Below, piece by piece: positions 6,770-50,501 of a DNA stretch of 64,000 nt. Under the pieces are notes generated by a model. The model saw only the letters and a list, made by a program, of their open reading frames with translations. It had not been told where the DNA came from and searched no databases. A program made the position numbers and the translations under genes. The stretch lies in IMG/VR virus record IMGVR_UViG_3300027985_000843, positions 307,740 to 371,739 of that record; one strand, 5' to 3'. Every line of letters starts with the position of its first letter. The first letter of the stretch is position 1.

Positions 6770-7018
6770 TCATGTCTTGTGCAGCTCCGCTTCTTTCCAG
6801 TCAGTGGGCTCGGGCTTGCTCTGCGAGTAGTGCTGGTCGTAAGCAGATTCGACCATCTCCAAAGTGATGTCGGGGTTGTCCAGCTTGCAGTTGCCGTAGA
6901 CCCAGCTCACCCTTTGCCGGCGAAGAAGCTCCGCTCGCTTCTCAGGAGACAGTTTCGACTCTGTCACCTTCATCTTGTTCGCCAGCTCGACCATCTCATC
7001 CCAATTCATTTTCGGCAT
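6770..7018 (-). CDS. Hypothetical protein
   Basis: ATG 6 nt after minus-strand class II motif. Confidence 0.7.
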   Translation of the reverse strand: MPKMNWDEMVELANKMKVTESKLSPEKRAELLRRQRVSWVYGNCKLDNPDITLEMVESAYDQHYSQSKPEPTDWKEAELHKT

Positions 7019-7028
7019 GCCCTCATCA

Positions 7029-7040
7029 TACACCGGTGTA
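7029..7040. promoter_or_regulatory. Class II promoter motif (C)GGTG-TANNNT-N6/9-start, here as bidirectional palindrome TACACCGGTGTA (about 35 copies in the window)
   Basis: Plus copies near 7035, 9927, 10511, 14759, 17605, 18439, 22238, 24510, 25618, 26824, 29348, 30768, 33274, 34662, 35769, 38417, 39383, 40785, 45200, 47628, 47948, 48672, 50486, 52021, 63968. Minus copies near 7029, 9916, 14753, 18433, 24037, 39156, 50443, 54595, 58690, 58975. Confidence 0.8.
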
Positions 7041-7050
7041 GGGTAGATGC

Positions 7051-7377
7051 ATGGCAAAGCTGAGCAAAAGCGTTCTGGAAGAGGGCCGTGCGCACGTTCG
7101 AAGCCGGGACCTGAAAAGCCTCCGGTTGTGGCAGGACACCAATATTCCCGCATGGAGACGTTCCTCCGTAGAGCAGCACTTCGAGAGGGCCTACGAGAAG
7201 GACAGCTCGGGAACACTGGCTCTGAAGCTTTTTGACAGGGTCTACACTGACATCGACCCTGTCGAAGAGAACGCCAAGGCTGTGCTCTCACTGGTCACCC
7301 TCGCCGTTAAACTAGTCGTCGTGCTCGTGCTTCTCGTTGGAGCGATCGGCGGGATCGTGTATCTTTTCCAGCTATGA
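7051..7377 (+). CDS. Hypothetical protein with C-terminal transmembrane helix
   Basis: Class II promoter; LVVVLVLLVGAIGGIVYLF. Confidence 0.75.
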   Translation: MAKLSKSVLEEGRAHVRSRDLKSLRLWQDTNIPAWRRSSVEQHFERAYEKDSSGTLALKLFDRVYTDIDPVEENAKAVLSLVTLAVKLVVVLVLLVGAIGGIVYLFQL

Positions 7378-7790
7378 GAGTCACACTGTACTGGCCCGAA
7401 TGCACCCTGTACCACAAGGGTAGCCCAGCAGAAGTCTTCTGGGACGCTCCCGCCCGCACCGTCTTCTGGGTGGAGGCCACCATCCAAGAGGTAGAGACGT
7501 CCATCCGACCTCACATGACATCCGGTCTTGAGGAGTACGAGAGGATACGGGATCTCCCCCTGGAAGTCAGGGAAGATCACATGTTCGATGATCGTCTGTG
7601 CTTCCTCGTGAGTCAGAACCTCGACTTCGTAGGCTGGTGCTTCCGGATCTACCCCTACTCCGCCATGTGGGGCCGGGACGGGAGCCCGTTCAAAGCTATC
7701 GGCCCGTGGCCGAAGGACGGAGGGTTCCCGCCGGCAGGTGTTCAGATTTCCTCCCTCGAAGCCTTGCGGAACTTCATCCCGCCTGCGTGA
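7374..7790 (+). CDS. Hypothetical protein
   Basis: ATGA overlap with upstream gene. Confidence 0.7.
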   Translation: MRVTLYWPECTLYHKGSPAEVFWDAPARTVFWVEATIQEVETSIRPHMTSGLEEYERIRDLPLEVREDHMFDDRLCFLVSQNLDFVGWCFRIYPYSAMWGRDGSPFKAIGPWPKDGGFPPAGVQISSLEALRNFIPPA

Positions 7791-7813
7791 TCTTCTTGTA
7801 TTCTCGTTGAGAC

Positions 7814-9070
7814 ATGAGTCTCTTCAAGACTGCGGCAGACCTCATCGCAGAAGGCAAGTCATCGGAAGCGTTCGATCTCATCCTCAAGGGCGAGGTCGTC
7901 GAAGACTCCCGGGACTTTATCGCCAACCAGCTGGGACGCGATGTCCCCTGGTGGGACCGAGCAGACATCCAGCCAGCTGGATCTCGGATGAGCACGGAGC
8001 CGGACTCCTGGATCGGTCACTCCCTACTCAAGAAGGCCATCGAGGGCGGCCCGCCTGTCCACAACAGTGAGTGGGCTGGTCAGCTCGTGGTGCCGGGCAA
8101 GCACCTGGTACAGGCGTGCGAGAAGGTGCTCGGCCTCCGACCCGTGTGGGTCCGGGGCAGCTCCATCCTGTTCGCCTCCGAAGAGACCATGCTCAAGATC
8201 TGGTTCACTGGTCGGGATAAGAATGCCTCGGCCGAGATGGTGACCTCGTCGGCGAAGTTGATGAAACACGCCTCCCAGCTCTTCGACAGATGCCTCACTC
8301 ATGAGAGTGCCAAGAAGGGACACGTCTTCACCCTCGTGGCAACCATGCACGGTTACCGTGTCGCTCAACTCGGCACGGCAGGCAATCCTATCGAGCGTGG
8401 GAACTACAGCCCGGAGACCCTCAAGGCGTACGATCACATTGCCCAGGAACTCAACGCGGAGGACCCTGACGGCCGCTTGAGCATCCTCGCGGGTGAGCCC
8501 GGGACCGGAAAGACCTACCTCATCCGAAGCCTTCTCGGAGAGTGTCCCAAGGCCGCCTTCATCGTGGTACCGCCCCAGATGGTCGAGAACCTCGGTTCCC
8601 CCGAGATGCTCCCAGCCCTGGTCAACGCCCGCGACATGATGGACGGCCCCATGGTTCTCATCCTGGAGGACGGCGACTCTTGTCTCGTGGCTCGAAAGAA
8701 GCTTGGGGAGACAGCAGCAGACAAGACAAGCAACATGAACGCCATCAGCTCCCTACTCAACCTCGGGGACGGCATCCTTGGTTCGGTGCTCGACCTGCGC
8801 ATCGTGGCGACCACGAATGCGGAGGAGATCGACCTGGACCCGGCCATCCAACGTCCAGGCCGCTTGAGCATCTACGCCAAGGTCGATGCCCTGCCGCCCA
8901 ACGTCGCGGCCGCCGCCTTGTCCCGCCTCACGGGCCAGAAGGTTGCCTTCGACAAGTCTGCAACCATTGCAGAAGTCTACAAGCGGGCTCGGGAGATGGG
9001 TTGGAAACCGGACACCAAGAAGAAGAAGGCTGAGAAGCAGAAGCAGCTCCGCCTCGACATTCTCACTTGA
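7814..9070 (+). CDS. AAA+ ATPase (single domain)
   Basis: Walker A GEPGTGKT, Walker B LILEDGD, sensor TTN, second region of homology DPAIQRPGR. Confidence 0.9.
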   Translation: MSLFKTAADLIAEGKSSEAFDLILKGEVVEDSRDFIANQLGRDVPWWDRADIQPAGSRMSTEPDSWIGHSLLKKAIEGGPPVHNSEWAGQLVVPGKHLVQACEKVLGLRPVWVRGSSILFASEETMLKIWFTGRDKNASAEMVTSSAKLMKHASQLFDRCLTHESAKKGHVFTLVATMHGYRVAQLGTAGNPIERGNYSPETLKAYDHIAQELNAEDPDGRLSILAGEPGTGKTYLIRSLLGECPKAAFIVVPPQMVENLGSPEMLPALVNARDMMDGPMVLILEDGDSCLVARKKLGETAADKTSNMNAISSLLNLGDGILGSVLDLRIVATTNAEEIDLDPAIQRPGRLSIYAKVDALPPNVAAAALSRLTGQKVAFDKSATIAEVYKRAREMGWKPDTKKKKAEKQKQLRLDILT

Positions 9071-9461
9071 TCGATGACTCGGGGAGCTTAGCGACGAGGA
9101 AGCTCCCGCCCCTCTGCCACGCCCGCTTCTCCAATCGGAACTTGAGCCCACGCTTCTTCATCGTGTCGATGACGTCCTTCATCGCAGCGTAGGCTTCCGG
9201 GTTCACGACGTCCGACAGTTTCGCCCCCGCGTCCATCATGTCGCGGGCGGTGTCGATGTCGTACTGGAGGTAATCGGAGGGGTCGATGTTGAAGGCGAAC
9301 ACCCGGGTTTGGGTGTTGAAATACCGGCGGCCCCGAGGGTACTTCTTGTGGGCTGCGTGAGCCCTCGGGCCGAGCCACTTCATGAGCTGGTCGAACTCTC
9401 GATCGGACAGCTCGCGAGCTTCCAGGTACCTGTTGACAACCCTCTCTGTGGACTCACTCAT
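9063..9461 (-). CDS. Hypothetical protein with N-terminal ERVVNRYL motif
   Basis: Track ORF, internal ATG at 9461. Confidence 0.7.
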   Translation of the reverse strand: MSESTERVVNRYLEARELSDREFDQLMKWLGPRAHAAHKKYPRGRRYFNTQTRVFAFNIDPSDYLQYDIDTARDMMDAGAKLSDVVNPEAYAAMKDVIDTMKKRGLKFRLEKRAWQRGGSFLVAKLPESSIK

Positions 9462-9521
9462 GACTACCCTCGCGGACAAGAACTTCTGTTGGTACTACGT
9501 CTCGGCGAGGGTCTGGTTCGG

Positions 9522-9905
9522 CTATTTCTCGTTCCGTACCTCGATGCCGGGTAGGGAGTTCACCCAAGCCTTGAGATCCTTGAGGTCGTCGAAGACCTGG
9601 ATCCCCAGCTTTTTGGCAAGCTCAACCTCTGCCCGCGTGCCCGACGACTTCTCCCAGCCCTTCAGGAGCATGATGGCGTCACATCTGGACATCATTTCCA
9701 GGGTGCCGGCAAGCCAGAAGCTGTCCGGCATCTCCCCGTCGTAGAAGGCTGTATTTGCATGCGGGATAAGTGGCATGACCCCCAACTTCGCCACCTGAAG
9801 CCCTAAGATTCGAGCATTGAAGATGTTACGGGCCACCTTCCAGGGGGTCTTGGCTCTGTAGGGGCCTGCAACGTACACGATTTTCATTCGGTTGATTCGT
9901 TCCAT
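9522..9905 (-). CDS. DUF4406/nucleoside 2-deoxyribosyltransferase-like protein
   Basis: IVYVAGPY...PLIPH...CDAIMLLKGWEKSSGTRAEVELAKKLG. Confidence 0.8.
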   Translation of the reverse strand: MERINRMKIVYVAGPYRAKTPWKVARNIFNARILGLQVAKLGVMPLIPHANTAFYDGEMPDSFWLAGTLEMMSRCDAIMLLKGWEKSSGTRAEVELAKKLGIQVFDDLKDLKAWVNSLPGIEVRNEK

Positions 9906-9941
9906 GTCCAGAATCTACACCGATTCGGTGTATGACTCAGC

Positions 9942-10508
9942 ATGACCACCGGAGAACCCTACCGGGACCCACCTCTCAGTGGGACAACGACACAGCAAGA
10001 ATTCGAAGTGTTCATGCGGGATCAGGAGATCGACTGCATCGCTCGATACCAGCTCTGTCGAAAGACAGCCGCCTATTGGAAGGACTACTCCCAAAAAGGC
10101 CGCGACCGATCGTTTTTCTATGCCGCCCTCGCCATTGTCGCGACCCCTCTCATCATCTTGGGCACGGCCTATCAGTACGGCGACAACAGGCTGTTCGAGG
10201 GTATCCTAACCCTCGTCCTCTTGGCTCTCGGCGCATTCATCCTTGCACAGATCATCGCCTACTACCGCTACTGGATGCACCGGGATGCGCACGCGGACCA
10301 CACCGTGAGGGCGGCCAAGTACAAATGCCTGGCAAGTACGGCGGCCTTTCAACTGGGCTTCGTCAATCACAGGATGTCCGACAGTGATCGAGAAGATGAG
10401 GTGATCTCCTTCCTCAAGGACAAGGAAGCTCTCGATCGTGACTGCAACCCGAGCCTCGCAACTCTGGTAGACGAAAAGAACAGCGTACTGCGACTGCTTA
10501 CCAAGTAA
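9942..10508 (+). CDS. Two-TM protein, SLATT-like
   Basis: Two hydrophobic helices followed by H...A.KY..L pattern; class II promoter. Confidence 0.5.
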   Translation: MTTGEPYRDPPLSGTTTQQEFEVFMRDQEIDCIARYQLCRKTAAYWKDYSQKGRDRSFFYAALAIVATPLIILGTAYQYGDNRLFEGILTLVLLALGAFILAQIIAYYRYWMHRDAHADHTVRAAKYKCLASTAAFQLGFVNHRMSDSDREDEVISFLKDKEALDRDCNPSLATLVDEKNSVLRLLTK

Positions 10509-10525
10509 CCGGTGTAGGTAGGAAC

Positions 10526-10852
10526 ATGGTAGACGACAAGGAAATGGACGAACCGACGGCGACCTTCGTCGCCTCTCCTGAGTGTGTGAGCGAGGCCCTG
10601 GAGACGTTCAAGACAGGGCGTAAGCCGGACTTCACGGTCACAAGGGCGTACCTGTCCGAGGCTTGGAACCACGAGAAATCCAAGGGCTTCGAGATCTCGT
10701 GGGAGACAGTGAGTGCCGGGTTCGGGTCAATCACGGTTGCCGTCGACCAAGAGACCGGGAAAGTTCGGTGCGACACGGAGTCCATGAGCAAGCGCTTCGT
10801 CAAGGAAGTGTTCGCCAAGTTCGTGGACGACCTGCCGGAGAGTACCACGTGA
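10526..10852 (+). CDS. Hypothetical protein
   Basis: Class II promoter, track ORF. Confidence 0.7.
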   Translation: MVDDKEMDEPTATFVASPECVSEALETFKTGRKPDFTVTRAYLSEAWNHEKSKGFEISWETVSAGFGSITVAVDQETGKVRCDTESMSKRFVKEVFAKFVDDLPESTT

Positions 10853-11133
10853 AGCTCACGGACCTGCAACTCCTGAGGATCTTGCTGAGCATGCCGCCCG
10901 GCAAGCTCAAGAACAGAAGCGCCTTCCAAGCGATGTACGACAGCCTTGCCACGGGCGAGATCGTATCGCTGTTCCCCAAACAGCGGGCATGGGCAGAGCG
11001 TGTCTACAAGGAAAACAACCTCGATAAGCGGCCTCTTACCTTCCGACAGAAGGTCGAAGTCCAGGACAAGAACAAGGGCTCGGGCAAGATCCTAGACTTC
11101 GGCCCGCTCCCCATGAAACCCCCAGGGAAGTAG
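10849..11133 (+). CDS. Hypothetical protein
   Basis: GTGA overlap with upstream stop; MKLTDLQLLRILL... Confidence 0.65.
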   Translation: MKLTDLQLLRILLSMPPGKLKNRSAFQAMYDSLATGEIVSLFPKQRAWAERVYKENNLDKRPLTFRQKVEVQDKNKGSGKILDFGPLPMKPPGK

Positions 11134-11136
11134 ACC

Positions 11137-11766
11137 ATGGCAAGTAAATACGTGAGCAAGTGGATCTGGAGAAGCTCAAATACGCATCCGGTCGAACGCC
11201 GGAACGTCATCATTGCGGACAACAAAGCCTACGTCCAGCCGAACAAGCATGACGCGAAGAAGGCCGAGATCGTCGACATGGTCCGGGTCTTCGACACCAA
11301 GGAAGAGGCCATCGCGGCCGCCGCGCTCGGGGGTCGCGTCGTCTGGACCTTCACGGACACCGGACCCCGTTGGGGTAGGCCCGAGGTGGACAAGATCGAA
11401 GTCTTCCGAGTGAAGATCTCCGAACTGCTCTACTCCTACGGAAACGTGTCTGCCGTCCGCATCGACGCCAAAGGCAACCGTCTGGGTGATGGGTTCATGA
11501 TTCCCCGGGAGCGTTGTTTCGGCACGGAAGCTGCGGCCCGCAAGGCCCTGGCCGAGAAGCTTTCCGAGTGGCGGCAGGACTTCGAGAAGGAACTGAGGAA
11601 CATCACGGCTCACGTGGAACTCGTGCGTAATGCGGTGAAGGCCGTCGAGCGTGCAGGCACCAAGGTTCCTGAGTACAAGTCGCTCCTCCGTCGGCAGAAG
11701 GACCGCCGGAACCGCGAACAAAAGAAGCGCGAAGCCCGACGAGCGGAACTTCGAAAGCACAGCTAG
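11137..11766 (+). CDS. Hypothetical protein with coiled-coil C-terminus
   Basis: Track ORF in operon-like run. Confidence 0.7.
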   Translation: MASKYVSKWIWRSSNTHPVERRNVIIADNKAYVQPNKHDAKKAEIVDMVRVFDTKEEAIAAAALGGRVVWTFTDTGPRWGRPEVDKIEVFRVKISELLYSYGNVSAVRIDAKGNRLGDGFMIPRERCFGTEAAARKALAEKLSEWRQDFEKELRNITAHVELVRNAVKAVERAGTKVPEYKSLLRRQKDRRNREQKKREARRAELRKHS

Positions 11767-11776
11767 CCTTCTGAGC

Positions 11777-12187
11777 ATGCCACTTCAGGTCTGGACTGCT
11801 CGCATTTCGTGTCGAGACCCTGACTCGCTCAACATCACGCGCAAGTCAGGGAATGCAGTCTTTGCACCCTCGTGGGCCCTCTTGGGGCCGGCCCTCGCCC
11901 GTCGCCGCGAAGGGGCAGCACTCACCGACGACGAGTGGAAGCTCGCCTACGCCGCACCCTACCTCCAGGAAATGACACGGAGCCACAAGATCCACCGCTC
12001 CGTGTGGGATCACCTACTCAAGCAGGACCGAGTAGTTCTCACCTGCTACTGCACCAACCCCAAGCGTTGTCATCGTACCCTTCTCGGGCTCTTCCTCCAA
12101 CAGAGGTTGGGGGCCGTGTTCCATGGTGAACTCGACCCTGATGCGGAGTTGCGAGACGTGTTCGACGCAATGCAGAAACTCGAATGA
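11777..12187 (+). CDS. DUF488/YeaO-like protein
   Basis: FAPSWALL...Y..EM...VVLTCYC....CHR. Confidence 0.7.
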   Translation: MPLQVWTARISCRDPDSLNITRKSGNAVFAPSWALLGPALARRREGAALTDDEWKLAYAAPYLQEMTRSHKIHRSVWDHLLKQDRVVLTCYCTNPKRCHRTLLGLFLQQRLGAVFHGELDPDAELRDVFDAMQKLE

Positions 12188-12735
12188 GGTTTACCGTGTT
12201 CCGACATCCGATCGATAGAGTGTTCGAAATCCCCGCACCCCTCACCCAAGAGCAGATAGAGAGGCAAACAGAGATCTACCAGATCTTTCTCCGGTTCGCA
12301 TCACTGCTGGACGCGACGATCTTCCACAACGAAGACAGCGACGCGTGTTTCGAGCTTCTTCGCCAAGCCAGAGACAAGGCTCTGTCCGCGTCCCGACTGA
12401 ATCGAAGCACCGTCACTATGGACGTGGTGTCGAGGCTCTTCTGGCATGTCGAGAAACAGGATCTTCTCGTCGGCCGAGTCTACTTTAATGCCATCGACTA
12501 CGCGGACGTGCGGAAGTTCGGCAGAGGCCAGCTGGATATCGAAAACAGAGCCGTGATGCTGAGGAAAGGTATTCAGGGTACGCTGTTCGGAGCCCAGGTC
12601 CGGACCAGCCGACGCATTCCCCCTGGTTACGCCCTTCTTGTGCCCATGGATGATCGGGAAGAGAGCTTCGAGAAGGACCCCGACTTCGATTCAGAGAAGG
12701 GGCCCGAAGAGAAGGATCTAATTCAGATCAGATAA
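12184..12735 (+). CDS. Hypothetical protein
   Basis: ATGA overlap, track ORF. Confidence 0.65.
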   Translation: MRFTVFRHPIDRVFEIPAPLTQEQIERQTEIYQIFLRFASLLDATIFHNEDSDACFELLRQARDKALSASRLNRSTVTMDVVSRLFWHVEKQDLLVGRVYFNAIDYADVRKFGRGQLDIENRAVMLRKGIQGTLFGAQVRTSRRIPPGYALLVPMDDREESFEKDPDFDSEKGPEEKDLIQIR

Positions 12736-12783
12736 CTCCGAACTCCACCTGGTCGGGGACGTAATAGGACAAAGGAACCGAGC

Positions 12784-13497
12784 ATGAGCCGCAACCGAAA
12801 GAAGCCGTCCCTGGGGGCGGCAATGATCATCTACCTCATCAGCTTCCTGATCTCAGGCAGTGTCATTGCCCTCACGCACTGGGTGAGTCCCGGACTCATC
12901 CCCCTGACCACGAGCGACATCTGGAGCTATCACAATACCGGCTTCGGAGAATGGATGCTCACGGCCTTGCCCCTTCTCGGGTGGGGGTTCGGGGCCTCGC
13001 TCATTTCTGGCCTGATCAACGGGTCCGACCCCTATGTGAGCGGCGGTGAGATCCTCGTGAAGGGGGCTACTATCAGTGCCTTCGCTGGAATCTTCGAGGA
13101 GTTGGCTCACCGGTGGCTTTCGTTCCTCGGGGCCTTTGGTGTTCTTGCCGTCACGAACTACCTTCTGGGAGGCTTCGTGTTCGGGACAGGTCTGCCTGAG
13201 TGGCTTCACAACAATGTGTGGGGCCATCTCGCGGACTGGACCACCTTCGGGATGCTGCACGACTGGATCTATCATCCGGGCGGGTGGCTCGTAGGCGCAG
13301 CCATGCTCTACAGCAACGCCGTCTTCCGCGACGGTCACAAGTATCAGGGGTGGTTCGGCTACATCAACTCGTGGTTTATCGGGATGTACCTGTTTTACAT
13401 CATGTTTCACCACGGGCTCCTAGCCGCCATTCTCGTGCACTTTGCCTACGACATGGTCATTTTCACGGTGCGTGCGCTTTTAGCCGGCCGATCTTAA
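12784..13497 (+). CDS. CPBP (CAAX/Abi-like) intramembrane metalloprotease
   Basis: Multiple TM helices; GIFEELAHRW (EExxxR), FRDGH (FxxxH), HFAYD (HxxxD/N); class I promoter plus AAAGGA SD. Confidence 0.72.
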   Translation: MSRNRKKPSLGAAMIIYLISFLISGSVIALTHWVSPGLIPLTTSDIWSYHNTGFGEWMLTALPLLGWGFGASLISGLINGSDPYVSGGEILVKGATISAFAGIFEELAHRWLSFLGAFGVLAVTNYLLGGFVFGTGLPEWLHNNVWGHLADWTTFGMLHDWIYHPGGWLVGAAMLYSNAVFRDGHKYQGWFGYINSWFIGMYLFYIMFHHGLLAAILVHFAYDMVIFTVRALLAGRS

Positions 13498-13707
13498 CGC
13501 CTGCGCAGTCGCTCTCGGCGGCCGCCTGCGGGGCGCTTCTTTCGCTTTTGCGGGTGTTCCTTGTACCATCGGCCGATGGCACTGGCGAGGCAATGCCTTT
13601 CGTCCGGCAGGCCGGCCCACGTCGACGTACGAATGCCCAACGACTTCGCCAGTCGGCGAAGGTTCTCGACACGGGCATCCATCAGAGTGTCGTAAGGTAT
13701 GGCGGGG

Positions 13708-14406
13708 CTAGGTTTCATCCTTGAGGCGTTTGATCATGGCCGGAACGCCGGAAAAGTCAATGCGGCTGAACTTGATGTAGTCGTGCCGCTCTACCTTCAC
13801 GCACTGGTCCCCCATCAGCTTGTTCCAGGTTTCCACGCATTGTTCGAACTCTTCGACCATCGCGTGACCCAGCACCTTGAGGACCTGTTCCTTCTGCGAG
13901 GCGACTTCCTTCTCGGCTGATTCTGTGTTCAGACCGCCGAGGATCATGACGCGGATGTGGTTCTTCGTGTTGTGCCACAAGGAATCCGCGAAGCTCTTCA
14001 GCTCGGTCTCGATCAGGATGGATGCCGCTGACTCGTACGCTTTTCGCTTCGTCAGATAAGGCCCCTGGAGGCCGCCGGCATTCACGAACCATGGACCGAG
14101 ATCTTCCTTCGTCTTGTGACCTCGGAACTCCTCCCACGGGCCCAGACAGCCACAGACCTTGCACTTGTTGTGCAGTGTGCTGCGTTCCCCCACGAACACG
14201 ACATCCTCGCTTCCGCAGGTTGGGCAGCCATAGGGGAGCGCCGCCTCCTCACTGAACTCGGGTTCGGGGTCGGGCCCGCAGTCCTCACAGGGATAGCTCT
14301 GCTGGATCTGCTGAGTCTGCACAGGACAGTCTTCGTGCCCGTACTTGCACCCGTGAATCGCACAGCAGTGCCCTTGGTGAACGAGAGGGTTGGAGTTGGT
14401 CATCAC
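13708..14406 (-). CDS. Cys-rich hypothetical protein (zinc ribbons)
   Basis: CPTCGS...CKVCGC; track ORF. Confidence 0.65.
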   Translation of the reverse strand: MMTNSNPLVHQGHCCAIHGCKYGHEDCPVQTQQIQQSYPCEDCGPDPEPEFSEEAALPYGCPTCGSEDVVFVGERSTLHNKCKVCGCLGPWEEFRGHKTKEDLGPWFVNAGGLQGPYLTKRKAYESAASILIETELKSFADSLWHNTKNHIRVMILGGLNTESAEKEVASQKEQVLKVLGHAMVEEFEQCVETWNKLMGDQCVKVERHDYIKFSRIDFSGVPAMIKRLKDET

Positions 14407-14741
14407 ACGCTCTTCCGGATGAAGGCAACGGGACCTTCCCCGCCACAGTGGGTGAACTGAGCGACCTTGCCGTCGTGAAGCTTGACGTCGTCGAAGCAGG
14501 TGAAGCCCCCGTCGGCCCCGTCTTCGTTGCCGTCATCGTAGGGCTTGCCGTCCTTCATCTTGAAGCCGTAGCTTAGGAAGAACTTGTGGACAGCCATCAC
14601 GGCTTCCCTGTAGGTAGGGCGGGAAGCGATGGTGCCGTCCGCTGAATGGTCGTGCTTCATGACCGCAACGAAAGGCTTGGTCAGAGGAGTCTTTTCCATG
14701 CCCTCGCCGGACGCGACTATGACGGGTTTTTTCTTTGCCAT
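14403..14741 (-). CDS. Hypothetical protein
   Basis: ATG at 14741 after minus-strand class II motif. Confidence 0.7.
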   Translation of the reverse strand: MAKKKPVIVASGEGMEKTPLTKPFVAVMKHDHSADGTIASRPTYREAVMAVHKFFLSYGFKMKDGKPYDDGNEDGADGGFTCFDDVKLHDGKVAQFTHCGGEGPVAFIRKSV

Positions 14742-14748
14742 GCTCTCC

Positions 14749-14768
14749 ACCATACACCGGTGTATGGT
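14749..14768. promoter_or_regulatory. Perfect 20-bp palindrome ACCATACACCGGTGTATGGT: back-to-back class II promoters
   Basis: Sequence equals its reverse complement; divergent ATGs at 14741 and 14775. Confidence 0.8.
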
Positions 14769-14774
14769 CGTTCC

Positions 14775-15332
14775 ATGAACACCGCAACGCCTTACAACGT
14801 CCTGTACTACGGTCAGTGGGGGCAGCCCGGGCACTACCTACTCGACGAATACGGCAGGACCGTCCGTATGGCTGTTCAGAAGAGCCTGCTGCCCTGGACA
14901 GAAGGGCAATACTACAGCCTACCGCCGGGCTTTCGTAGGAGTGGGTACGACATCATCGAAGCTCCACAAGGCCACGCATCCCTGCATCGCAAGGGTGGCT
15001 GGACGGCCCTAGCCTTCTGGGATCGCTCGGGCGACCATCGGGGGAATTCGATGAGCTGCTTCTTCGTCCGGGGCGAGCACACCTTCGACGAAGTGGTCCA
15101 GATCACGAAGGAGCGGCTCCCTTCCCTTTGGAAGCGGTTCCCTTTCGAGGTCATCTGCAAGGAGGACCAGGGCATCCTCAACCCCGACCACCTGTCCTTG
15201 GAGGAGAAGGCTGCCGACTATGCTCGGGTCACCGACATGCTCAGGCAAGTCATCGAAGATCGAGACAAATGGCGGCAGCGGGCCAAGGATCTTGAGGCTG
15301 ACCTCAAGCATGCAGAAAAATGCCGAACTTGA
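14775..15332 (+). CDS. Hypothetical protein
   Basis: Class II promoter; in-frame ATG of track ORF. Confidence 0.75.
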   Translation: MNTATPYNVLYYGQWGQPGHYLLDEYGRTVRMAVQKSLLPWTEGQYYSLPPGFRRSGYDIIEAPQGHASLHRKGGWTALAFWDRSGDHRGNSMSCFFVRGEHTFDEVVQITKERLPSLWKRFPFEVICKEDQGILNPDHLSLEEKAADYARVTDMLRQVIEDRDKWRQRAKDLEADLKHAEKCRT

Positions 15333-15356
15333 TCAGTCGGCAGGCGTAGTACGGGC

Positions 15357-15707
15357 ATGAAGACCCTGACCACCGAAGACCTCGCCAACTGGGAAGCCGT
15401 CTCCGCCGTCGCTTGGAAAGAATGCGACGACCGAAAGCTCACGAAGGTCGAGAAGATCGCCGTGACTATCAAGGCTCTCCGTGATGACCCCGACGCCTTC
15501 CGCGTCAGAGAGCTTCTCGTCCCCATGTCCCAGCGAGAAGTCTGTGCTGTCCTTCGGACCCACATGGTCCTCATCAACTCGGTGCTCGGGACCACCTACC
15601 GCTACGTGGGGGCGAGCTACGCCCCCTCCGGGCGGGGAGCCTTCGGTCGGCTCGGGGGCGGCCATCGGGGTCACTACAGCGAGCCGTGCCTGCTCAGCTA
15701 CACGTGA
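15357..15707 (+). CDS. Hypothetical protein, paralog of 21362..21733
   Basis: Shared W..C.DR.LT..EK and SGRGAFGRL.GG.R.HYS.P motifs; class I promoter. Confidence 0.8.
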   Translation: MKTLTTEDLANWEAVSAVAWKECDDRKLTKVEKIAVTIKALRDDPDAFRVRELLVPMSQREVCAVLRTHMVLINSVLGTTYRYVGASYAPSGRGAFGRLGGGHRGHYSEPCLLSYT

Positions 15708-16012
15708 GGTGTCTGTGAAGATCGAACTCAGTGTCAAGAACGTGCAAGTCCTCGTCAACCTCCCCGGAACGGACGAGGTGCACATCAATCTGAGCGGCCC
15801 CAGCCCCTTCCCTGCCATGGGATACGATGGCGTGGCAACGATCAAGACCCAGAAGGGCGAAGGAGTTCGGTGGTGCCGGGAAGTCCTCGGGGTCGAGCCC
15901 TCGGTGGTCGACTGCAACCCGGGCATCGTGAGTTGACTTTCCCGACAACCCCAGTACAATCACCACAACTGCTGACGGTGGATGGCCGTGGCCCCAACTG
16001 TGGGAGATCCCC

Positions 16013-16426
16013 ATGCAAAACATCCGCGTCAAACGCTTCAATAATGGCCCTTCTGAGTACAACGTCCACGTCCTGACGGGTGGGGTGGTCGAGCCAGAGG
16101 ACCGGTCGTGGCTTCTTTTCATCCACGAGGATGGCAGTCCGCCCACCTTGTGGCTCCGCACGAAGGTCGAGATGTGCCCCAACCACGTAGAAGACACCTA
16201 CGTGATGGCAACCGCCGTGCTGAACGATGAGGGGCAGGAAGTCACCCCCGCCAGCCTCTACCGGGTTGGGCTCCGCGTCCTCGGAACCAGTCTGTCCGCT
16301 GAGACACGCAACTGGTTGGAAGGTGAAACACCAGATGAGTCCCTCTTGGAGTTGCGGGAAGCTGCCCGAAAAATGGCCTCCCTGAACTTCGGCGGCACCA
16401 ATACCAAGGTCATGCTCGACACCTAA
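16013..16426 (+). CDS. Hypothetical protein
   Basis: GGAGA SD; track ORF. Confidence 0.65.
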   Translation: MQNIRVKRFNNGPSEYNVHVLTGGVVEPEDRSWLLFIHEDGSPPTLWLRTKVEMCPNHVEDTYVMATAVLNDEGQEVTPASLYRVGLRVLGTSLSAETRNWLEGETPDESLLELREAARKMASLNFGGTNTKVMLDT

Positions 16427-16483
16427 TCGGTGTATCTACGTCGAAAGCTCCGAACTCTTTCGAAGCTCTGACGTAGTACGGAC

Positions 16484-16717
16484 ATGAGCAACCCCTACCA
16501 TATCGCACTCGTTGTCGGAGCCGCTGTCGCCGCCCTTCAGGCGGACCCGGACTTCGGTCACATCGCCACCGTCCACACCAACGCGGACCCCGGGGTATGG
16601 CTCAAGACGGGCGAGGACGTCCATTGCTTCGTGTGCGCCCAAGACAACCTGGGTAACTTCTCCTGCGTGACGCAGGAGGGCTACGTACGCCAGTACCTGG
16701 CGAGTGAGGTGGACTGA
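16484..16717 (+). CDS. Hypothetical protein
   Basis: Class I promoter. Confidence 0.75.
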   Translation: MSNPYHIALVVGAAVAALQADPDFGHIATVHTNADPGVWLKTGEDVHCFVCAQDNLGNFSCVTQEGYVRQYLASEVD

Positions 16718-17103
16718 TGTCAATCGCGGAGACCATCCGGAAAATCCACAAGGACAACCCGACCACCAAGGTGGTGATCGTCTGCGAACCCGGGGAGATG
16801 AACTGGGAAAAGAAGACTCGCGGGCCTGGCAAGATCGAGGTCCAGCTACGGTTGGACTCGAACCGGGGCTTCTACTCAGAAGAGATATCCTTGCGCGGTA
16901 GCGACGAAAGGATCTCTGCTGTGATCCACAAGCTGTATCTCCGGGCGGTCAAGGGCGCCCTGGAATCCAGCAAGAGTGAACTGAAGAACCTGGTAGAGAA
17001 AGCCATTGCCGCCAAGAAGGCCGTCAAGGCTGCCGACCACGAGGTGGCCGAACAACAACGCATGATCGAAAAGACAGAGGCTCTGCTGACGAACGGAGGG
17101 TGA
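16717..17103 (+). CDS. Hypothetical protein with coiled-coil C-terminus
   Basis: TGATG overlap. Confidence 0.7.
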   Translation: MSIAETIRKIHKDNPTTKVVIVCEPGEMNWEKKTRGPGKIEVQLRLDSNRGFYSEEISLRGSDERISAVIHKLYLRAVKGALESSKSELKNLVEKAIAAKKAVKAADHEVAEQQRMIEKTEALLTNGG

Positions 17104-17223
17104 TATGGGCAAAAAGTACATCGTTGAAGAGGTTGAGAGTGGTAGCGGTTGGGGGTGCTTGTCGGTCATCGGACTGATCACAGTGGTGGGCTTCGTTCTG
17201 CTGCTCTGCGCTGCCATGGCAAA

Positions 17224-17601
17224 ATGAGTCGACGCGATCTGTCTCAACTCCGAAGGGCCCTCCCCACCTATCGGTTCTACGAGGACGACCGCTACGGATT
17301 CTGCGTCCTCGCCCCACACAATAGCCTGGAGAGTGTCCCTCGTGAGTTGAGGCTGGGGGCCGATGTCGTTCTCGGCCTGATCCGAGACACAGTGGTAGTT
17401 CTAAGGGATCAGCGCTGTCGTGCCGGCGGCACTCAGACGCTGCGCCTGTTCCAGGTGATTGCGGGGCTCGTCCCGGATGGTATCTACGACAGTCGGACGG
17501 TCGAACAGATCCGTGTGCTCCTGGAGGCTCATATCCGGGAGTGCCCCACGGTGTCGTCTTCGTGGGCCCGACTCAAAAATGGCCCCGACTTCGACTTCTG
17601 A
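17224..17601 (+). CDS. Hypothetical protein with possible degenerate peptidoglycan-binding motif
   Basis: FQVIAGLVPDGIYDSRT resembles PG_binding_1 (FQ...GL..DG..D..T). Confidence 0.55.
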   Translation: MSRRDLSQLRRALPTYRFYEDDRYGFCVLAPHNSLESVPRELRLGADVVLGLIRDTVVVLRDQRCRAGGTQTLRLFQVIAGLVPDGIYDSRTVEQIRVLLEAHIRECPTVSSSWARLKNGPDFDF

Positions 17602-17621
17602 ATCCGGTGTATGGTCCAGAC

Positions 17622-18116
17622 ATGGACGACACCCAAGACAAGACCCTCGACTGTATCAAGCGTCTACGCAGCCTCACCGTCCCCGGTAAGAACCTGCCCG
17701 GGAAAGAGGTCAAGAAAGCCCTCTCGGATCTTCAGGGGCTGCATCCCCAATACCGGTTCTACTACGACAAGCTCTACCTGCTCGTTGTCGTTGGCCCCCC
17801 TGATTGTCGACTGACTTTGCCGCCGTACCTCTACAATCAAGCCGATCTTGTGCTGGTTGTCCAAGAGGACGCTGCCAAGTTCCGGTGCGACATTCTGAAG
17901 GACAGAGACGGTGTCATTGAGACCGTCGGCCAGCGCTACCGCGTCATGCAGGCGGCCTTCGGTCTGCCTCCGACCGGCCGACTCGACGACGCATCCCTTG
18001 CCGCCATGGCCGGCGTGGTCGAGGGCGCCCCGAAGTTGACAGAGGAGGAGATCGAGGCTCTCCTGGAGGACCGGCGGAACCGCTACGGGCGGAATCTCAA
18101 AAATCTCAAGGGTTGA
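17622..18116 (+). CDS. Hypothetical protein, distant paralog of 17224..17601
   Basis: P.YRFY.D, AD.VL and Q...GL.P.G..D shared; class II promoter. Confidence 0.65.
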   Translation: MDDTQDKTLDCIKRLRSLTVPGKNLPGKEVKKALSDLQGLHPQYRFYYDKLYLLVVVGPPDCRLTLPPYLYNQADLVLVVQEDAAKFRCDILKDRDGVIETVGQRYRVMQAAFGLPPTGRLDDASLAAMAGVVEGAPKLTEEEIEALLEDRRNRYGRNLKNLKG

Positions 18117-18152
18117 TCCGAACTCTTGCTCGGTCCCGTCGTAGTACGGGCA

Positions 18153-18422
18153 TCAATGGACCGGATTGCACATGCCCTGGGCCCACAGGGCTCCTCGGAT
18201 GAAGTTCAGGTGTCCGTCACACCGTCCGAGGTTGCCTGGGCCGCCCTCGCGGATCTCTCGGCGAATTTCCCCGCACACCCACAGCAGGTGGCCTGCGGTT
18301 TCCTTTTCCGAGAGGGGAGGCCCGTCCAGTCGGCGGGCTGTGACGGTCTCTCGTCGAAGATCAGACTCGTAGGCGTCAACGACTTCGAGAATTCTGCTTT
18401 CGATGTAGGTCACGTCGGGCAT
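18153..18422 (-). CDS. Hypothetical protein
   Basis: ATG 6 nt after minus-strand class II motif in palindrome at 18433-18444. Confidence 0.7.
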   Translation of the reverse strand: MPDVTYIESRILEVVDAYESDLRRETVTARRLDGPPLSEKETAGHLLWVCGEIRREIREGGPGNLGRCDGHLNFIRGALWAQGMCNPVH

Positions 18423-18469
18423 AGGCCCACCATACACCGGTGTATCCTCCCAGGAAAGGAGTTCCAACG

Positions 18470-18796
18470 ATGAGCGTTCTCGGCATTCTTCCCACAGGTG
18501 TCCTCCACAACCAGGAGACAGATAGGTACCATCCCATCGCCTTCCACCACTCTCCGCCGCCGTCGGGCGACCTGCCGAATGGTACCGGCCGGTACCGATC
18601 CGTTGGTCATCATACGAATGGCTTCGACACGAAAGCCGAAGCCGATGCATGGATCGAAAAGACTGAGAACATGTCCCCGATCAACAGCGTGTGGGAGTGG
18701 GACGGCAAGGGTTCCCCCGCTATGGTCATCTGGCTCAAGTGCGACACGAGCGTCCATTTCGAGGAAGCATGCAGCGAGAAATCAAAATCCTCTTGA
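18470..18796 (+). CDS. Hypothetical protein
   Basis: AAAGGAG SD; divergent from 18433 palindrome. Confidence 0.7.
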   Translation: MSVLGILPTGVLHNQETDRYHPIAFHHSPPPSGDLPNGTGRYRSVGHHTNGFDTKAEADAWIEKTENMSPINSVWEWDGKGSPAMVIWLKCDTSVHFEEACSEKSKSS

Positions 18797-36123: not shown

Positions 36124-37545
36124 ATGGTCACAGAATCAGACCTCCTAATCCACGGGCTCTCGAAAGCTTCCAGCGAAGCCTACACGAAAAGCTGGAAAGA
36201 GTTCGAGACCTGGTGCCAGGCGAACGGCAGATCAGCCCTCCCGGCCTCTGTCGAGACCATGGTGGAGTTCATCAAGAGCCACGAAGAGAAGTGGTCCGCT
36301 TCCACCCTGAGCCGAGCTGCGGCCGCCATCGCCAAGATCCACGTCCTGTACGGGGCCAGGTCCCCTGTCCAAGACGAGGCCAAGTTCATCCTCAAGAGCT
36401 TGGAAGCACAGCAGGAGCCCAACAGCAAAAAGGCCCTCACGAAAGACGAGTTCGAGACACTAGTTAGGCACACGAGCGGGCAGTCCCTCAAAGACATGCG
36501 GGACAAGGCTATGCTCCTGTTGGGCGTCTACACGGGCATGCCCATCGATACCCTGGTGGCCCTGCAAACAGAGCACATTGTCGAAGACAACGGCCGTTGG
36601 ACCATCGAGGTCGACGACTACCGGGTCGACTTCGACTTTGCTGTTGAACCCATCCCAAGCTTGTCCGCTTGGCTGAACTTCGCGAACATCGAAAAAGGCT
36701 ACGTTTTCCGCAATGTTCGGAAGAATGATACGCTGGGAGAGGGCAGCATCGGCTCGCGCCAGGTCAACCGCCTGCTCAAGAACCTTGCCACCAAAGCGGG
36801 GCTCGACGCCAAGGGCATCTCCTACGATTCGCTTCGTCGGAGCTTCCAGAATTCGGTCGGGCAGAAGATCGCCGTGGTCGTCCAAAAAACGGTTCGGCCC
36901 CGGACCTCTCCCAGCCTCCAGCGAGCCCTCTCCGACCTGGTCGAAGTGAAGGCTCAGGAAAAGCAGCTCCTCCAGGACTGGGTCGAAGCCTCCGAACGTG
37001 CTGAGGCCCTAAGCAAAGAGCTGAACCTCGTCACGGCACAGCTCCAGCAGATCCGTCAGGCCACCCAGGCCCACACGGTCACTGCGGACAGCAGCACACA
37101 AGACCTTCTCCGGTCCCTACTCTCCGGCTCGAAAACCCCCGAGGAGTGCCTTCAGCTCCTCGCCACGGCCTATCCCGAACGGATTGTGGTGCTGCCCTCA
37201 GCCGTGGCCTCTGCCCAGAAGGCACGCGCCTTCCGCTTCACAGACAAGCTGTTGCAGCTCTTCGATAAGCTCGCAACCGTCTACTTCGAGGCCCTGGCCT
37301 CAGGGAAGGGAGATACCGGCGCATACGCCTACATGGGGTGGAGCTATGCCGCCAACGACAGCTTCGGAAGCGCGTCCGCCAAGAAGCGGCGGGTCTTCGA
37401 ATACAAGGGCCAAGACATCCTCATGGAGAAGCACCTGCGGATCGGTCAGAAGCCCTCCCCCTCCGAAACCATCCGCGTCCACTTCGAGTGGATCGCCCCC
37501 GAGAAAAAGATCGTCATCGGCTGGTGCGGCCGCCACCTGGAGTAA
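36124..37545 (+). CDS. Degenerate Cre-like tyrosine-recombinase fold fused to coiled coil and possible RelE-like C-terminal domain
   Basis: SAM-like N-terminus (W..F..WC...PAS.ET..FI...S.STL); RD.AMLLLG..TGMP (Arg to Pro); SYDSLRR (His to Asp); no C-terminal Tyr motif; C-terminus MEKHLRIG...TIRVHF.W...KIVIGWCGRHL. Confidence 0.7.
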   Translation: MVTESDLLIHGLSKASSEAYTKSWKEFETWCQANGRSALPASVETMVEFIKSHEEKWSASTLSRAAAAIAKIHVLYGARSPVQDEAKFILKSLEAQQEPNSKKALTKDEFETLVRHTSGQSLKDMRDKAMLLLGVYTGMPIDTLVALQTEHIVEDNGRWTIEVDDYRVDFDFAVEPIPSLSAWLNFANIEKGYVFRNVRKNDTLGEGSIGSRQVNRLLKNLATKAGLDAKGISYDSLRRSFQNSVGQKIAVVVQKTVRPRTSPSLQRALSDLVEVKAQEKQLLQDWVEASERAEALSKELNLVTAQLQQIRQATQAHTVTADSSTQDLLRSLLSGSKTPEECLQLLATAYPERIVVLPSAVASAQKARAFRFTDKLLQLFDKLATVYFEALASGKGDTGAYAYMGWSYAANDSFGSASAKKRRVFEYKGQDILMEKHLRIGQKPSPSETIRVHFEWIAPEKKIVIGWCGRHLE

Positions 37546-50432: not shown

Positions 50433-50501
50433 CCCAAGAACATACACCGGCCAAAAGGGCCACCTCGGGGGCATAGAGCCCAACCGGTGTATGGTTGAGG
50501 C

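What the first reader, a model, noticed from the sequence alone, without database searches (positions are those of the whole stretch)
7029..18444. Second promoter class fused into bidirectional palindromes
Seen: (C)GGTG-TANNNT occurs about 35 times, 6-9 nt before start codons, with no evident -35 box. Because CCGG is self-complementary, two copies overlap into TACACCGGTGTA (7029, 18433), a perfect 20-mer ACCATACACCGGTGTATGGT (14749) and TACACCGA-T-TCGGTGTA (9916), each between divergent genes. The GGTG extension is not in the canonical TGn register. Inference: an ultra-compact divergent promoter, possibly read by a sigma70-type enzyme plus a phage factor, where the two directions compete for the same bases.
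Basis: partly seen in the sequence, partly recalled or inferred. Interest (0 to 1): 0.6.

Follow-up and report, generated by a model that had tools for sequence, protein, structure and literature searches.

The report
Back-to-back leaderless promoters in huge phage
A giant uncultured phage from a hydrothermal vent starts about a hundred of its genes with one invariant six-base signal (GGTGTA) placed so that the messenger RNA should begin at the start codon itself, and where two such genes diverge the signals abut and form short palindromes; this is a compact variant of known promoter types, not a new kind of element.

Summary
GGTGTANNNT occurs 38 times in the window against 2.8 expected, and 100 times in the whole 371,739-bp phage record. 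In 66 of those 100 sites, ATG or GTG opens an ORF of at least 50 aa exactly 6-8 nt after the hexamer. There is no -35 signal.

With the A of GGTGTA at -11, transcription should start on the start codon, so these are promoters for leaderless mRNAs.

GGTGTA is invariant, and the last T is only preferred. A relative (51.7% GC; its sigma-like protein is 57% identical) keeps the motif and spacing at seven orthologous genes from one 21-kb stretch and at two orthologues of the window's palindrome genes, while flanking sequence has diverged.

The palindromes are two promoters set back to back. The genome has 14 close pairs, with gaps of 0 to 37 bp and no overlap of the cores. The relative has no zero-gap pair, and one orthologous gene there has a gap of 25.

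A second class (CCGAAC-N16/17-CGTAGTA-N5-ATG) looks ECF-type and probably uses a phage-encoded sigma.

Which sigma reads GGTGTA, and who the host is, remain open. No RNA data exist, so no transcription start has been mapped.

The parts
7025..7044 (.). Zero-gap divergent class II pair. The minus-strand site is 7025-7034 (hexamer TATGAT) and the plus-strand site is 7035-7044 (hexamer TAGGGT). The palindrome core TACACCGGTGTA is 7029-7040. The two start codons are 33 bp apart.
6773..7018 (-). 82-aa ORF. Its ATG is 6 nt after the minus-strand hexamer, so the mRNA is predicted to be leaderless.
   Evidence: codon LLR +19.5 in frame, negative in the other frames
7051..7374 (+). 108-aa ORF. Its ATG is 6 nt after the plus-strand hexamer. 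The orthologue in relative G292 also has GGTGTA followed 10 nt later by ATG, but has no divergent partner.
9912..9936 (.). Divergent class II pair with a 5-bp gap (CACC-GATTC-GGTG), forming the 17-nt palindrome 9916-9932. The plus-side hexamer is TATGAC, which lacks the T at -7, and its ATG is 9 nt after the A of GGTGTA.
9525..9905 (-). 127-aa DUF4406/DUF7768 protein, predicted leaderless from the minus-strand promoter.
9942..10505 (+). 188-aa ORF read from the plus-strand promoter of the 9916 pair.
14749..14768 (.). Zero-gap divergent pair. Both hexamers are the consensus TATGGT, which is why the palindrome extends to a perfect 20-mer. The two start codons are 34 bp apart.
14406..14741 (-). 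112-aa ORF. Its ATG is 7 nt after the minus-strand hexamer.
14775..15329 (+). 185-aa ORF. Its ATG is 6 nt after the plus-strand hexamer. The next gene downstream (15357) has its own class I promoter.
18429..18448 (.). Zero-gap divergent pair. The minus side (TATGGT) is leaderless. The plus side (TATCCT) is followed by a 21-nt leader containing AAAGGAG, then ATG at 18470.
18156..18422 (-). 89-aa ORF, predicted leaderless. Its orthologue in G292 is also class II leaderless, but sits in a divergent pair with a 25-bp gap.
18470..18793 (+). 108-aa ORF with a Shine-Dalgarno-containing leader, read from the plus promoter of the 18433 pair.
50439..50495 (.). Divergent class II pair with a 37-bp gap. 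It drives leaderless ORFs 49482-50432 (minus, 317 aa) and 50502-51398 (plus, 299 aa, GTG start).
17606..17615 (+). Example of a solitary class II promoter (CCGGTGTATGGT, 6 nt, ATG of the 164-aa ORF 17622-18113). The 38 sites in the window are listed; beyond the four pairs above (eight sites, one of which lacks the final T and so is not among the 38), the remaining 31 are solitary.
15323..15359 (+). Example of the other class (class I): CCGAAC, 16 nt, CGTAGTA, 5 nt, ATG. There are 33 such bipartite sites in the window, interleaved with class II.

Best explanation
GGTGTA(nnnT), usually preceded by two pyrimidines, is a promoter that needs no -35 element. It is read by the host RNA polymerase with a sigma70-family factor. 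The TA is the T-12/A-11 of a -10 element, and GGTG at -16 to -13 replaces the -35 contact, as an extended -10 does but one base closer. Initiation 10-11 nt after the A falls on the A or G of ATG/GTG, so the mRNA has no leader and no Shine-Dalgarno sequence, and the ribosome must start at the 5' end.

Because nothing upstream of -18 is needed, two such promoters can be placed back to back. At zero gap, the CC preferred at -18/-17 of one promoter is the GG of the other. This gives TACACCGGTGTA and only 32 bp of DNA between the two start codons (the start codons lie 33-34 bp apart).

The palindrome is a by-product of this packing and not a separate element. One polymerase bound there should sterically exclude the other.

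The sigma is most likely the host's primary one, which would make this the class that needs no phage protein. The ECF-like class I would then be read by the phage's own sigma.

Shown here: the motif, its spacing, its conservation and the packing. Inferred: the transcription start, the identity of the sigma, and the mutual exclusion.
For: Enrichment and fixed spacing to RTG start codons: 66 of 100 sites against a 3.8% background. Start codons are 57 ATG, 9 GTG and no TTG or CTG. This matches the ATG/GTG-only rule for leaderless initiation reported in mycobacteria (PMC4633059).

C is preferred at -1 before the A of ATG. Shine-Dalgarno-like words occur upstream of only 8 of 122 starts that follow GGTGTA, against 45% at other gene starts.

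The motif is a transcription signal and not a translation signal. It also stands 7 nt before a tRNA gene and 41-346 nt before others, and it precedes leaders that carry their own Shine-Dalgarno sequence.

Single-base variants of GGTGTA show only background association with start codons.

Relative G292 is enriched for the pattern (34 sites against 6 for the control) with the same 10-nt peak. Seven orthologous genes from one 21-kb stretch, plus two orthologues of the window's palindrome genes, keep the motif and spacing while the flanks differ.

Divergent pairs with a gap of 40 bp or less: 15 observed against 1.85 expected at random. In the 14 close pairs listed the gaps are never negative.

No RNA polymerase gene was found. 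Canonical -35/-10 promoters are not above chance.

The only sigma domain 2 protein is ECF-like, and a class I promoter precedes its gene in both phages.

In both phages a class II promoter lies upstream of the sigma gene on the same strand.
Against: No transcription start has been mapped, because no RNA run holds this DNA.

The T at -7, normally one of the best-conserved bases of primary-sigma promoters, is present in only about 66% of sites here and 45% in the relative. GGTG, by contrast, is invariant, and TG is one base out of the canonical register. That pattern is more typical of a dedicated phage factor than of a host housekeeping sigma.

The pattern is not enriched in 10 genomes from 10 phylum-level groups, in 201 Actinomycetota or in 81 Chloroflexota. 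No host whose own promoters look like this was found.

The record is only 78% complete, so a factor could be encoded in the missing part.
Confidence: 0.72

Rival explanations
1. The promoter and leaderless reading is the same, but GGTGTA is recognised by a phage-specified factor rather than by the host primary sigma alone. Candidates are an unrecognised sigma-like or gp55-like protein, the 303-aa sigma-like protein itself, or a co-factor that binds GGTG next to sigma.
For: GGTGTA is invariant across about 100 sites in this phage and 31 in a relative of different GC content, while the T at -7 is loosely kept. The TG register is non-canonical. The pattern is not enriched in any sampled bacterial genome. 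The phage encodes a sigma domain 2 protein and a separate protein with two sigma region 4 motifs.
Against: Only one sigma domain 2 was detected. Its region 2 sequence and its best structural matches are mostly of the ECF/group 4 type, which suits CGT-type -10 elements such as class I. A factor needed for every promoter class would have to be injected with the DNA, and no canonical host-type promoter was found that could express it first. T-12/A-11 at the right distance is the hallmark of group 1-3 sigmas.
Confidence: 0.25
2. The palindromes are operators for a dimeric phage or host regulator that co-controls both divergent genes, and the promoter resemblance is secondary.
For: There are perfect 12-20-bp palindromes lying exactly between divergent genes. 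The 20-mer and the 9916 site can form hairpins as single strands.
Against: Most sites are solitary: 69 of the roughly 97 GGTGTA sites with a correctly spaced start lie outside the 14 close pairs. Positions -19/-20, which a palindromic operator would fix, carry no information. The gap between half-sites varies from 0 to 37 bp. The 20-mer is perfect only because both sides carry the commonest hexamer. The relative has no zero-gap pair, and one orthologous gene there has a 25-bp gap. Two of the four sites fold no better than shuffled sequence.
Confidence: 0.07
3. GGTG is a Shine-Dalgarno-like translation signal (GGUG can pair with the CACC of the 16S rRNA 3' end) on transcripts that start further upstream.
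For: GGUG is complementary to part of the usual anti-Shine-Dalgarno tail (established knowledge of 16S rRNA). The motif has fixed proximity to start codons.
Against: The distance from GGTG to the start codon is 12-13 nt, which is too long. The TA after it is invariant and unexplained by this reading. The motif precedes tRNA genes and precedes leaders that have their own GGAG-type Shine-Dalgarno sequence. In zero-gap pairs a transcript containing GGTG would have to start inside the oppositely oriented gene. Other genes in the genome use GGAG/GAGG/AGGA.
Confidence: 0.03

Closest known systems
Promoters of leaderless mRNAs in Actinobacteria and Deinococcus-Thermus (TANNNT 6-8 nt before ATG/GTG)
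   Same: A -10-type element sits at a fixed short distance from the start codon. There is no Shine-Dalgarno sequence. Only ATG or GTG is used. A -35 element is often absent (PMC4633059 for the mycobacterial rules; the motif geometry is from general knowledge).
   Different: Here an invariant GGTG abuts the TA, and the T at -7 is only preferred. The full pattern is not enriched in the 201 Actinomycetota genomes sampled. The host is unknown. Deinococcota could not be sampled.
[quoted passage not shown]
   Same: Promoter strength comes from bases just upstream of the -10 hexamer, so no -35 box is needed. In P23-45 this lets a phage keep using the host polymerase (PMC7403470).
   Different: TG is at -14/-13 instead of -15/-14, and GG at -16/-15 is also invariant. 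The original P23-45 promoter paper could not be read here, so its consensus was not compared.
Bidirectional promoters of bacteria (Warman, Grainger and colleagues)
   Same: Symmetric promoter sequence drives divergent transcription from one short stretch, and one polymerase excludes the other (bioRxiv 10.1101/2020.01.31.928960; PMC12825309).
   Different: In those promoters the -10 hexamers themselves overlap, and starts lie 7-25 bp apart, most often 18. Here the hexamers are 8 bp apart, the symmetry centre is CCGG upstream of both, the predicted starts are 33-34 bp apart, and in three of the four window pairs both mRNAs would be leaderless (at 18433 the + gene has a leader).
ECF sigma promoters (GAAC-type -35, 16-17 nt spacer, CGT-type -10) with an autoregulated sigma gene
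   Same: This applies to class I of this phage and not to the finding itself. Class I has CCGAAC, a 16/17-nt spacer and CGTAGTA. A class I promoter lies upstream of the phage sigma gene in both phages.
   Different: Class II has no -35 element and has a TA-type -10. It fails the ECF definition.

Membership tests
sigma70-family -10 promoter element | T-12 and A-11 at about 10-12 nt before the transcription start | tested here: met
   TA is invariant. The A lies 10 nt (60 sites), 11 nt (25) or 9 nt (11) before ATG/GTG. This takes the start codon as the transcription start, which is inferred.
sigma70-family -10 promoter element | T at -7 highly conserved | tested here: inconclusive
   T is present in about 66% of sites with a correctly spaced start here and in 14 of 31 in the relative.
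Extended -10 (TGn) promoter | TG at -15/-14, one base before the hexamer | tested here: not met
   TG is at -14/-13, directly abutting T-12.
Extended -10 (TGn) promoter | Functions without a -35 element | tested here: met
   Information content is about 0 at every position from -50 to -19. In zero-gap pairs that DNA is the partner's promoter and gene. This is sequence evidence only.
Leaderless mRNA gene | No room for, and no occurrence of, a Shine-Dalgarno sequence; start codon ATG or GTG | tested here: met
   There are 6-8 nt between hexamer and start. Shine-Dalgarno-like words occur at 8 of 122 starts. Start codons are 57 ATG, 9 GTG and 0 TTG/CTG.
Leaderless mRNA gene | The mRNA 5' end coincides with the start codon | not testable with these tools
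   No RNA run holds the sequence. Read laying laid nothing.
Bidirectional promoter sensu Warman et al. | Divergent starts 7-25 bp apart with overlapping -10 elements | tested here: not met
   Start codons are 33-34 bp apart at zero gap, and the hexamers are separated by 8 bp.
Palindromic operator of a dimeric regulator | Two half-sites at fixed spacing wherever the element occurs | tested here: not met
   Most sites are single. Gaps range from 0 to 37 bp. Zero-gap pairs are absent from the relative.
ECF sigma promoter | GAAC-like -35 and CGT-like -10 separated by 16-17 nt | tested here: not met
   Class II does not meet this. Class I does: 54 sites, with spacer 16 in 47 and 17 in 7.

The most novel reading that the evidence does not exclude
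GGTGTA is the target of a so far unrecognised phage-specified initiation factor. This would be a new promoter specificity that reads duplex GGTG plus A-11 and largely dispenses with T-7. The zero-gap pairs would then act as either/or switches, so that each genome copy expresses only one of the two divergent genes at a time.
Probability: 0.15. Interest if true: 0.7.

Novelty: new variant of a known kind. Interest (0 to 1): 0.45.

Why it matters
This uncultured phage of at least 372 kb gets an explicit, testable transcription map. About 100 class II and 54 class I promoters are predicted, almost all of them yielding leaderless mRNAs. A plausible cascade runs from class II, through a phage sigma, to class I.

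It corrects gene starts that standard gene callers misplace. The JGI calls in the relative often miss the leaderless ATG.

The zero-gap pairs come close to the tightest possible packing of two complete expression signals: 32 bp between two start codons, with no untranslated region on either side in two of the three zero-gap pairs. That makes them a compact natural part for studying polymerase competition and supercoiling coupling at divergent promoters.

The out-of-register, invariant GGTG is a lead to an unusual sigma-DNA contact or to a new factor.

Tried and rejected
Close relatives by DNA: megablast of 12 kb against cultured phages gave no match. A 16-mer of the palindrome in IMG/VR hit only an unrelated phage by chance.

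LR745208.1, the best DNA polymerase hit at 31% identity, is not enriched for the motif: 48 sites against 60 for the control.

The fused architecture, searched as a 20-specified-base pattern, is in no other record of viral contigs or metagenome contigs.

Host search:
- No WhiB gene was found.
- The DNA ligase query found no relative in bacterial genomes.
- The pattern is not enriched in 10 single genomes from 10 phylum-level groups, in 201 Actinomycetota or in 81 Chloroflexota.
- This is a sample and does not prove absence. Deinococcota could not be reached.
- One genome (G012) is unpublished. It had one match, and nothing rests on it.

Phage RNA polymerase: Pfam models for the beta, beta' and T7-type enzymes found nothing, and no DFDGD motif lies in a large ORF. 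This is weak evidence, because phage polymerases can be very divergent.

A possible third motif, TCGGTGA, seen in the long minus-strand module, is not enriched and lies mostly in coding sequence. It was dropped.

Foldseek on the whole sigma model gave only non-significant sigma hits. VIA-align supported domain 2 only.

RNA evidence: none is available. Read laying on the two DNA runs laid nothing, so there is no independent check of the assembly.

The P23-45 promoter paper (PMC3018760) is not held.


Full report
**Where the window lies.** The window is the last 64 kb (307,740-371,739) of a 371,739-bp linear IMG/VR virus record. The record has 59.4% GC and is 78% complete by CheckV. The DNA is held by runs labelled hydrothermal vent metagenome, and no RNA run holds it. 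A crude codon-usage gene call gives 437 genes covering 89% of the record. The two arms (0-100 kb and 240-372 kb) hold many short, strand-switching units. The centre (about 80-247 kb) is a long minus-strand block. It carries the DNA polymerase A, helicases, ligase, clamp loader, GroEL-like and baseplate genes that I could identify.

**The observation.**
- TACACCGGTGTA is present at 7029, 14753 and 18433 (0.02 expected by chance).
- The 20-mer ACCATACACCGGTGTATGGT is at 14749-14768. TACACCGATTCGGTGTA is at 9916-9932.
- GGTGTANNNT occurs 38 times in the window against 2.8 expected, and 100 times in the genome.
- In 66 of the 100, ATG or GTG opens an ORF of at least 50 aa exactly 6 nt (44 sites), 7 nt (18) or 8 nt (4) after the last T. 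The background rate for such a start is 3.8%.
- Aligning these sites shows no information anywhere from -50 to -19. There is a pyrimidine preference at the two bases before GGTG (C in 48 of 66 at the nearer one), a preferred hexamer TATGGT, and C just before the A of ATG.

**What is actually conserved.** I replaced each specified base in turn. Every single-base variant of GGTGTA falls to the background rate of association with start codons. Variants of the last T keep some association: 11 of 48 for A, 6 of 57 for C and 6 of 54 for G. Counting GGTGTA alone gives 259 sites. About 100 of them have ATG or GTG 9-12 nt after the A, with a sharp peak at 10. The signal is therefore yy-GGTGTA-nnn(T), with the A placed 11 bases before the first base of the start codon.

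**What it is.** T and A at -12/-11, a preferred T at -7, a pyrimidine at -1 and a purine at +1 make up the geometry of a sigma70-family -10 element whose transcription start is the start codon itself. The mRNAs would be leaderless. Four further observations support this:
- Six to eight bases leave no room for a Shine-Dalgarno sequence. Shine-Dalgarno-like words are rarer before these starts (8 of 122) than at random positions (12%). They occur at 45% of other gene starts.
- The start codons are 57 ATG and 9 GTG, with no TTG or CTG. This is the rule found experimentally for leaderless initiation in mycobacteria (PMC4633059).
- The motif is not tied to translation. It stands 7 nt before the first base of a tRNA gene (G000 1355-1430) and 41-346 nt before three others. 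It also stands before short leaders that carry their own GGAG-type ribosome site, as at window 18439 and 38417.
- The reading of GGTG as a ribosome-binding word fails on distance (12-13 nt) and on these cases.

**Comparative test.** The phage encodes a 303-aa protein with a Pfam Sigma70_r2 match above the curated cut-off. Its closest homologue (57% identity) lies on JGI contigs of 240,951 and 282,752 bp. The first of these is held as a virus record, which I fetched (G292, 51.7% GC).
- G292 has 34 matches to GGTGTA-N9-11-ATG against 6 for the reversed control.
- It shows the same peak at 10 nt, T or C at the two bases before GGTG, and T at -7 in only 14 of 31 sites.
- Seven genes in a 21-kb stretch have orthologues in our phage at 47-75% protein identity. 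All seven keep GGTGTA and the spacing to the same start codon, while the rest of the upstream DNA is unalignable.
- The motif is thus under selection across phages that differ by 8 points of GC.

**The palindromes.** I listed every minus-strand site that lies just left of a plus-strand site.
- There are 14 close pairs, with gaps between the two GGTG cores of 0, 0, 0, 5, 5, 5, 5, 9, 10, 12, 14, 15, 26 and 37 bp. Start codons are 33-70 bp apart. The gap is never negative.
- A separate count of all pairs of GGTGTA sites with a gap of 40 bp or less gives 15 against 1.85 for random placement, and only one face-to-face pair.
- At zero gap, the CC that each promoter prefers at -18/-17 is supplied by the GG of the partner, which makes TACACCGGTGTA. 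The 20-mer at 14749 is perfect only because both sides carry the commonest hexamer.
- Positions that a dimeric operator would fix (-19/-20 at solitary sites) carry no information.
- Two of the four sites fold no better than shuffles as single strands.
- All eight flanking ORFs have positive codon scores in the predicted frame only.
- In G292 there are only three pairs (gaps 8, 9 and 25) and none at zero.
- The orthologue of window 7051-7374 has a solitary class II promoter there. The orthologue of window 18156-18422 sits in the gap-25 pair. One pair with a gap of 9 is shared by both phages.
- A pattern that describes the fused architecture with 20 specified bases is found in no other viral or metagenome record.

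I conclude that the palindromes are the limiting case of packing two -35-independent promoters back to back. They are lineage-specific and are not a separate conserved element.

**Who reads it.**
- No multisubunit or T7-type RNA polymerase gene was detected, so the host core enzyme is assumed. Canonical TTGACA/TATAAT promoters are not above chance.
- A second, equally strict class is interleaved with class II. It has the form tCCGAAC, 16 nt (47 sites) or 17 nt (7 sites), CGTAGTA, 5 nt, ATG. There are 54 sites, 42 with exactly 5 nt to the start. This is the ECF sigma architecture, and with the ATG as +1 the CGT falls at -12 to -10.
- The 303-aa protein has ECF-like region 2 sequence. Its model (pLDDT 72.6) matches sigma domain 2 of many sigmas over residues 20-182, at Z 5-7.3. 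That is modest, but almost every top hit is a sigma, most of them ECF or other alternative sigmas.
- Its gene is preceded by a class I promoter in both phages, and further upstream on the same strand by a class II promoter.
- A separate 225-aa protein carries two sigma region 4 motifs.
- The simplest scheme is as follows. Class II is read by the host primary sigma and needs no phage protein. It primes expression of the phage sigma, which then reads class I and its own gene. This scheme is an inference.
- Against it stand the invariance of GGTG, the loose T at -7, the out-of-register TG and the lack of enrichment of the pattern in the bacterial genomes I could sample. The sample was ten phylum-level representatives, 201 Actinomycetota and 81 Chloroflexota. 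One of them, G012, is unpublished and immaterial.
- I therefore give a phage-specified factor about one chance in four.

**How the fused pairs should behave.** The two A-11 positions are 11 bp apart, and the bubbles open outwards. A polymerase in open complex covers roughly 40-55 bp upstream and 20 bp downstream of its start (general knowledge). That stretch includes the whole partner promoter, so binding should be mutually exclusive. Work on E. coli bidirectional promoters shows that such exclusion matters only when one side is strongly occupied (PMC12825309). Those promoters differ in geometry, with overlapping hexamers and starts 7-25 bp apart, mostly 18.

**Comparison and novelty.** The element works like the leaderless, -35-independent promoters of Actinobacteria and Deinococcus-Thermus. 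It also works like the extended -10 promoters that Thermus phage P23-45 uses with host polymerase (PMC7403470). It fails the TGn register test and the Warman-type bidirectional definition. I file it as a new variant of a known kind. The host is unknown, and no transcription start has been mapped.

**Limits.** Gene calls are my own rough ones. The record is incomplete. Read laying returned nothing, so the assembly has no independent check. No code other than table 11 was used.

Noticed in passing
window 1084-63592 (33 sites, e.g. 15323-15359); genome-wide 54: There is a second strict promoter class: tCCGAAC, 16/17 nt, CGTAGTA, 5 nt, ATG. It has ECF-sigma architecture, is also leaderless, and is interleaved gene by gene with class II. 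It is absent from 80-240 kb of the genome.
   Followed up: partly
outside the window: G000 282948-283859 (minus), locus L009:790-1701: A 303-aa sigma-like protein has an ECF-type region 2 with an insertion of about 70 residues. The fold of its C-terminal domain is unclear. A class I promoter with a leader of about 34 nt precedes the gene here and in the relative, which suggests autoregulation.
   Followed up: partly
outside the window: G000 218306-218983 (minus), locus L010:1144-1821: A 225-aa protein has two sigma region 4 helix-turn-helix motifs and no region 2. It is encoded inside the long minus-strand block. It could be the -35-reading half of a split sigma or a separate regulator.
   Followed up: no
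outside the window: G000 1336-1430: A tRNA with anticodon TTA, which would read the stop codon TAA, begins 7 nt after a class II hexamer. Its primary transcript may therefore start at or next to the mature 5' end. Standard code gives 89% coding density, so there is no sign of recoding.
   Followed up: partly
outside the window: G000 247554-276034 (minus): An array of about 46 tRNA genes plus a tmRNA (tag ANDNSAMPVAA) is interspersed with small ORFs and class II promoters.
   Followed up: no
window 55141, 57079 (plus) and 63569 (minus): Three class I promoters are followed by the same words, agggtGTGgcgggtggga. This is a small repeated gene family or a repeated 5' end.
   Followed up: no
outside the window: G000 100-247 kb, minus strand: In the long replication and structural block, 10 of the 12-13 GGTGTA sites with a correctly spaced start lack the T at -7. 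These may be weaker or differently timed promoters. No separate late promoter motif was found.
   Followed up: partly
relative, L035 445, 3086, 4791, 6907, 17225: In the relative, GGTGTA is often directly preceded by a GC-rich hairpin and a run of T (words like gccctccttt). An intrinsic terminator thus abuts the next promoter, which explains T instead of C at -18/-17 there.
   Followed up: no
window 52037-53680 and 36124-37542: A 548-aa protein with five DUF4379 treble-clef zinc-finger repeats is driven by class II. A 473-aa tyrosine-recombinase-like protein is driven by class I.
   Followed up: no
relative, loci L034/L035: Automatic gene calls on the relative's contigs often start downstream or upstream of the ATG predicted from the promoter. 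One call (9131-9811) starts exactly at it. Leaderless starts are probably mis-annotated in this phage group.
   Followed up: partly
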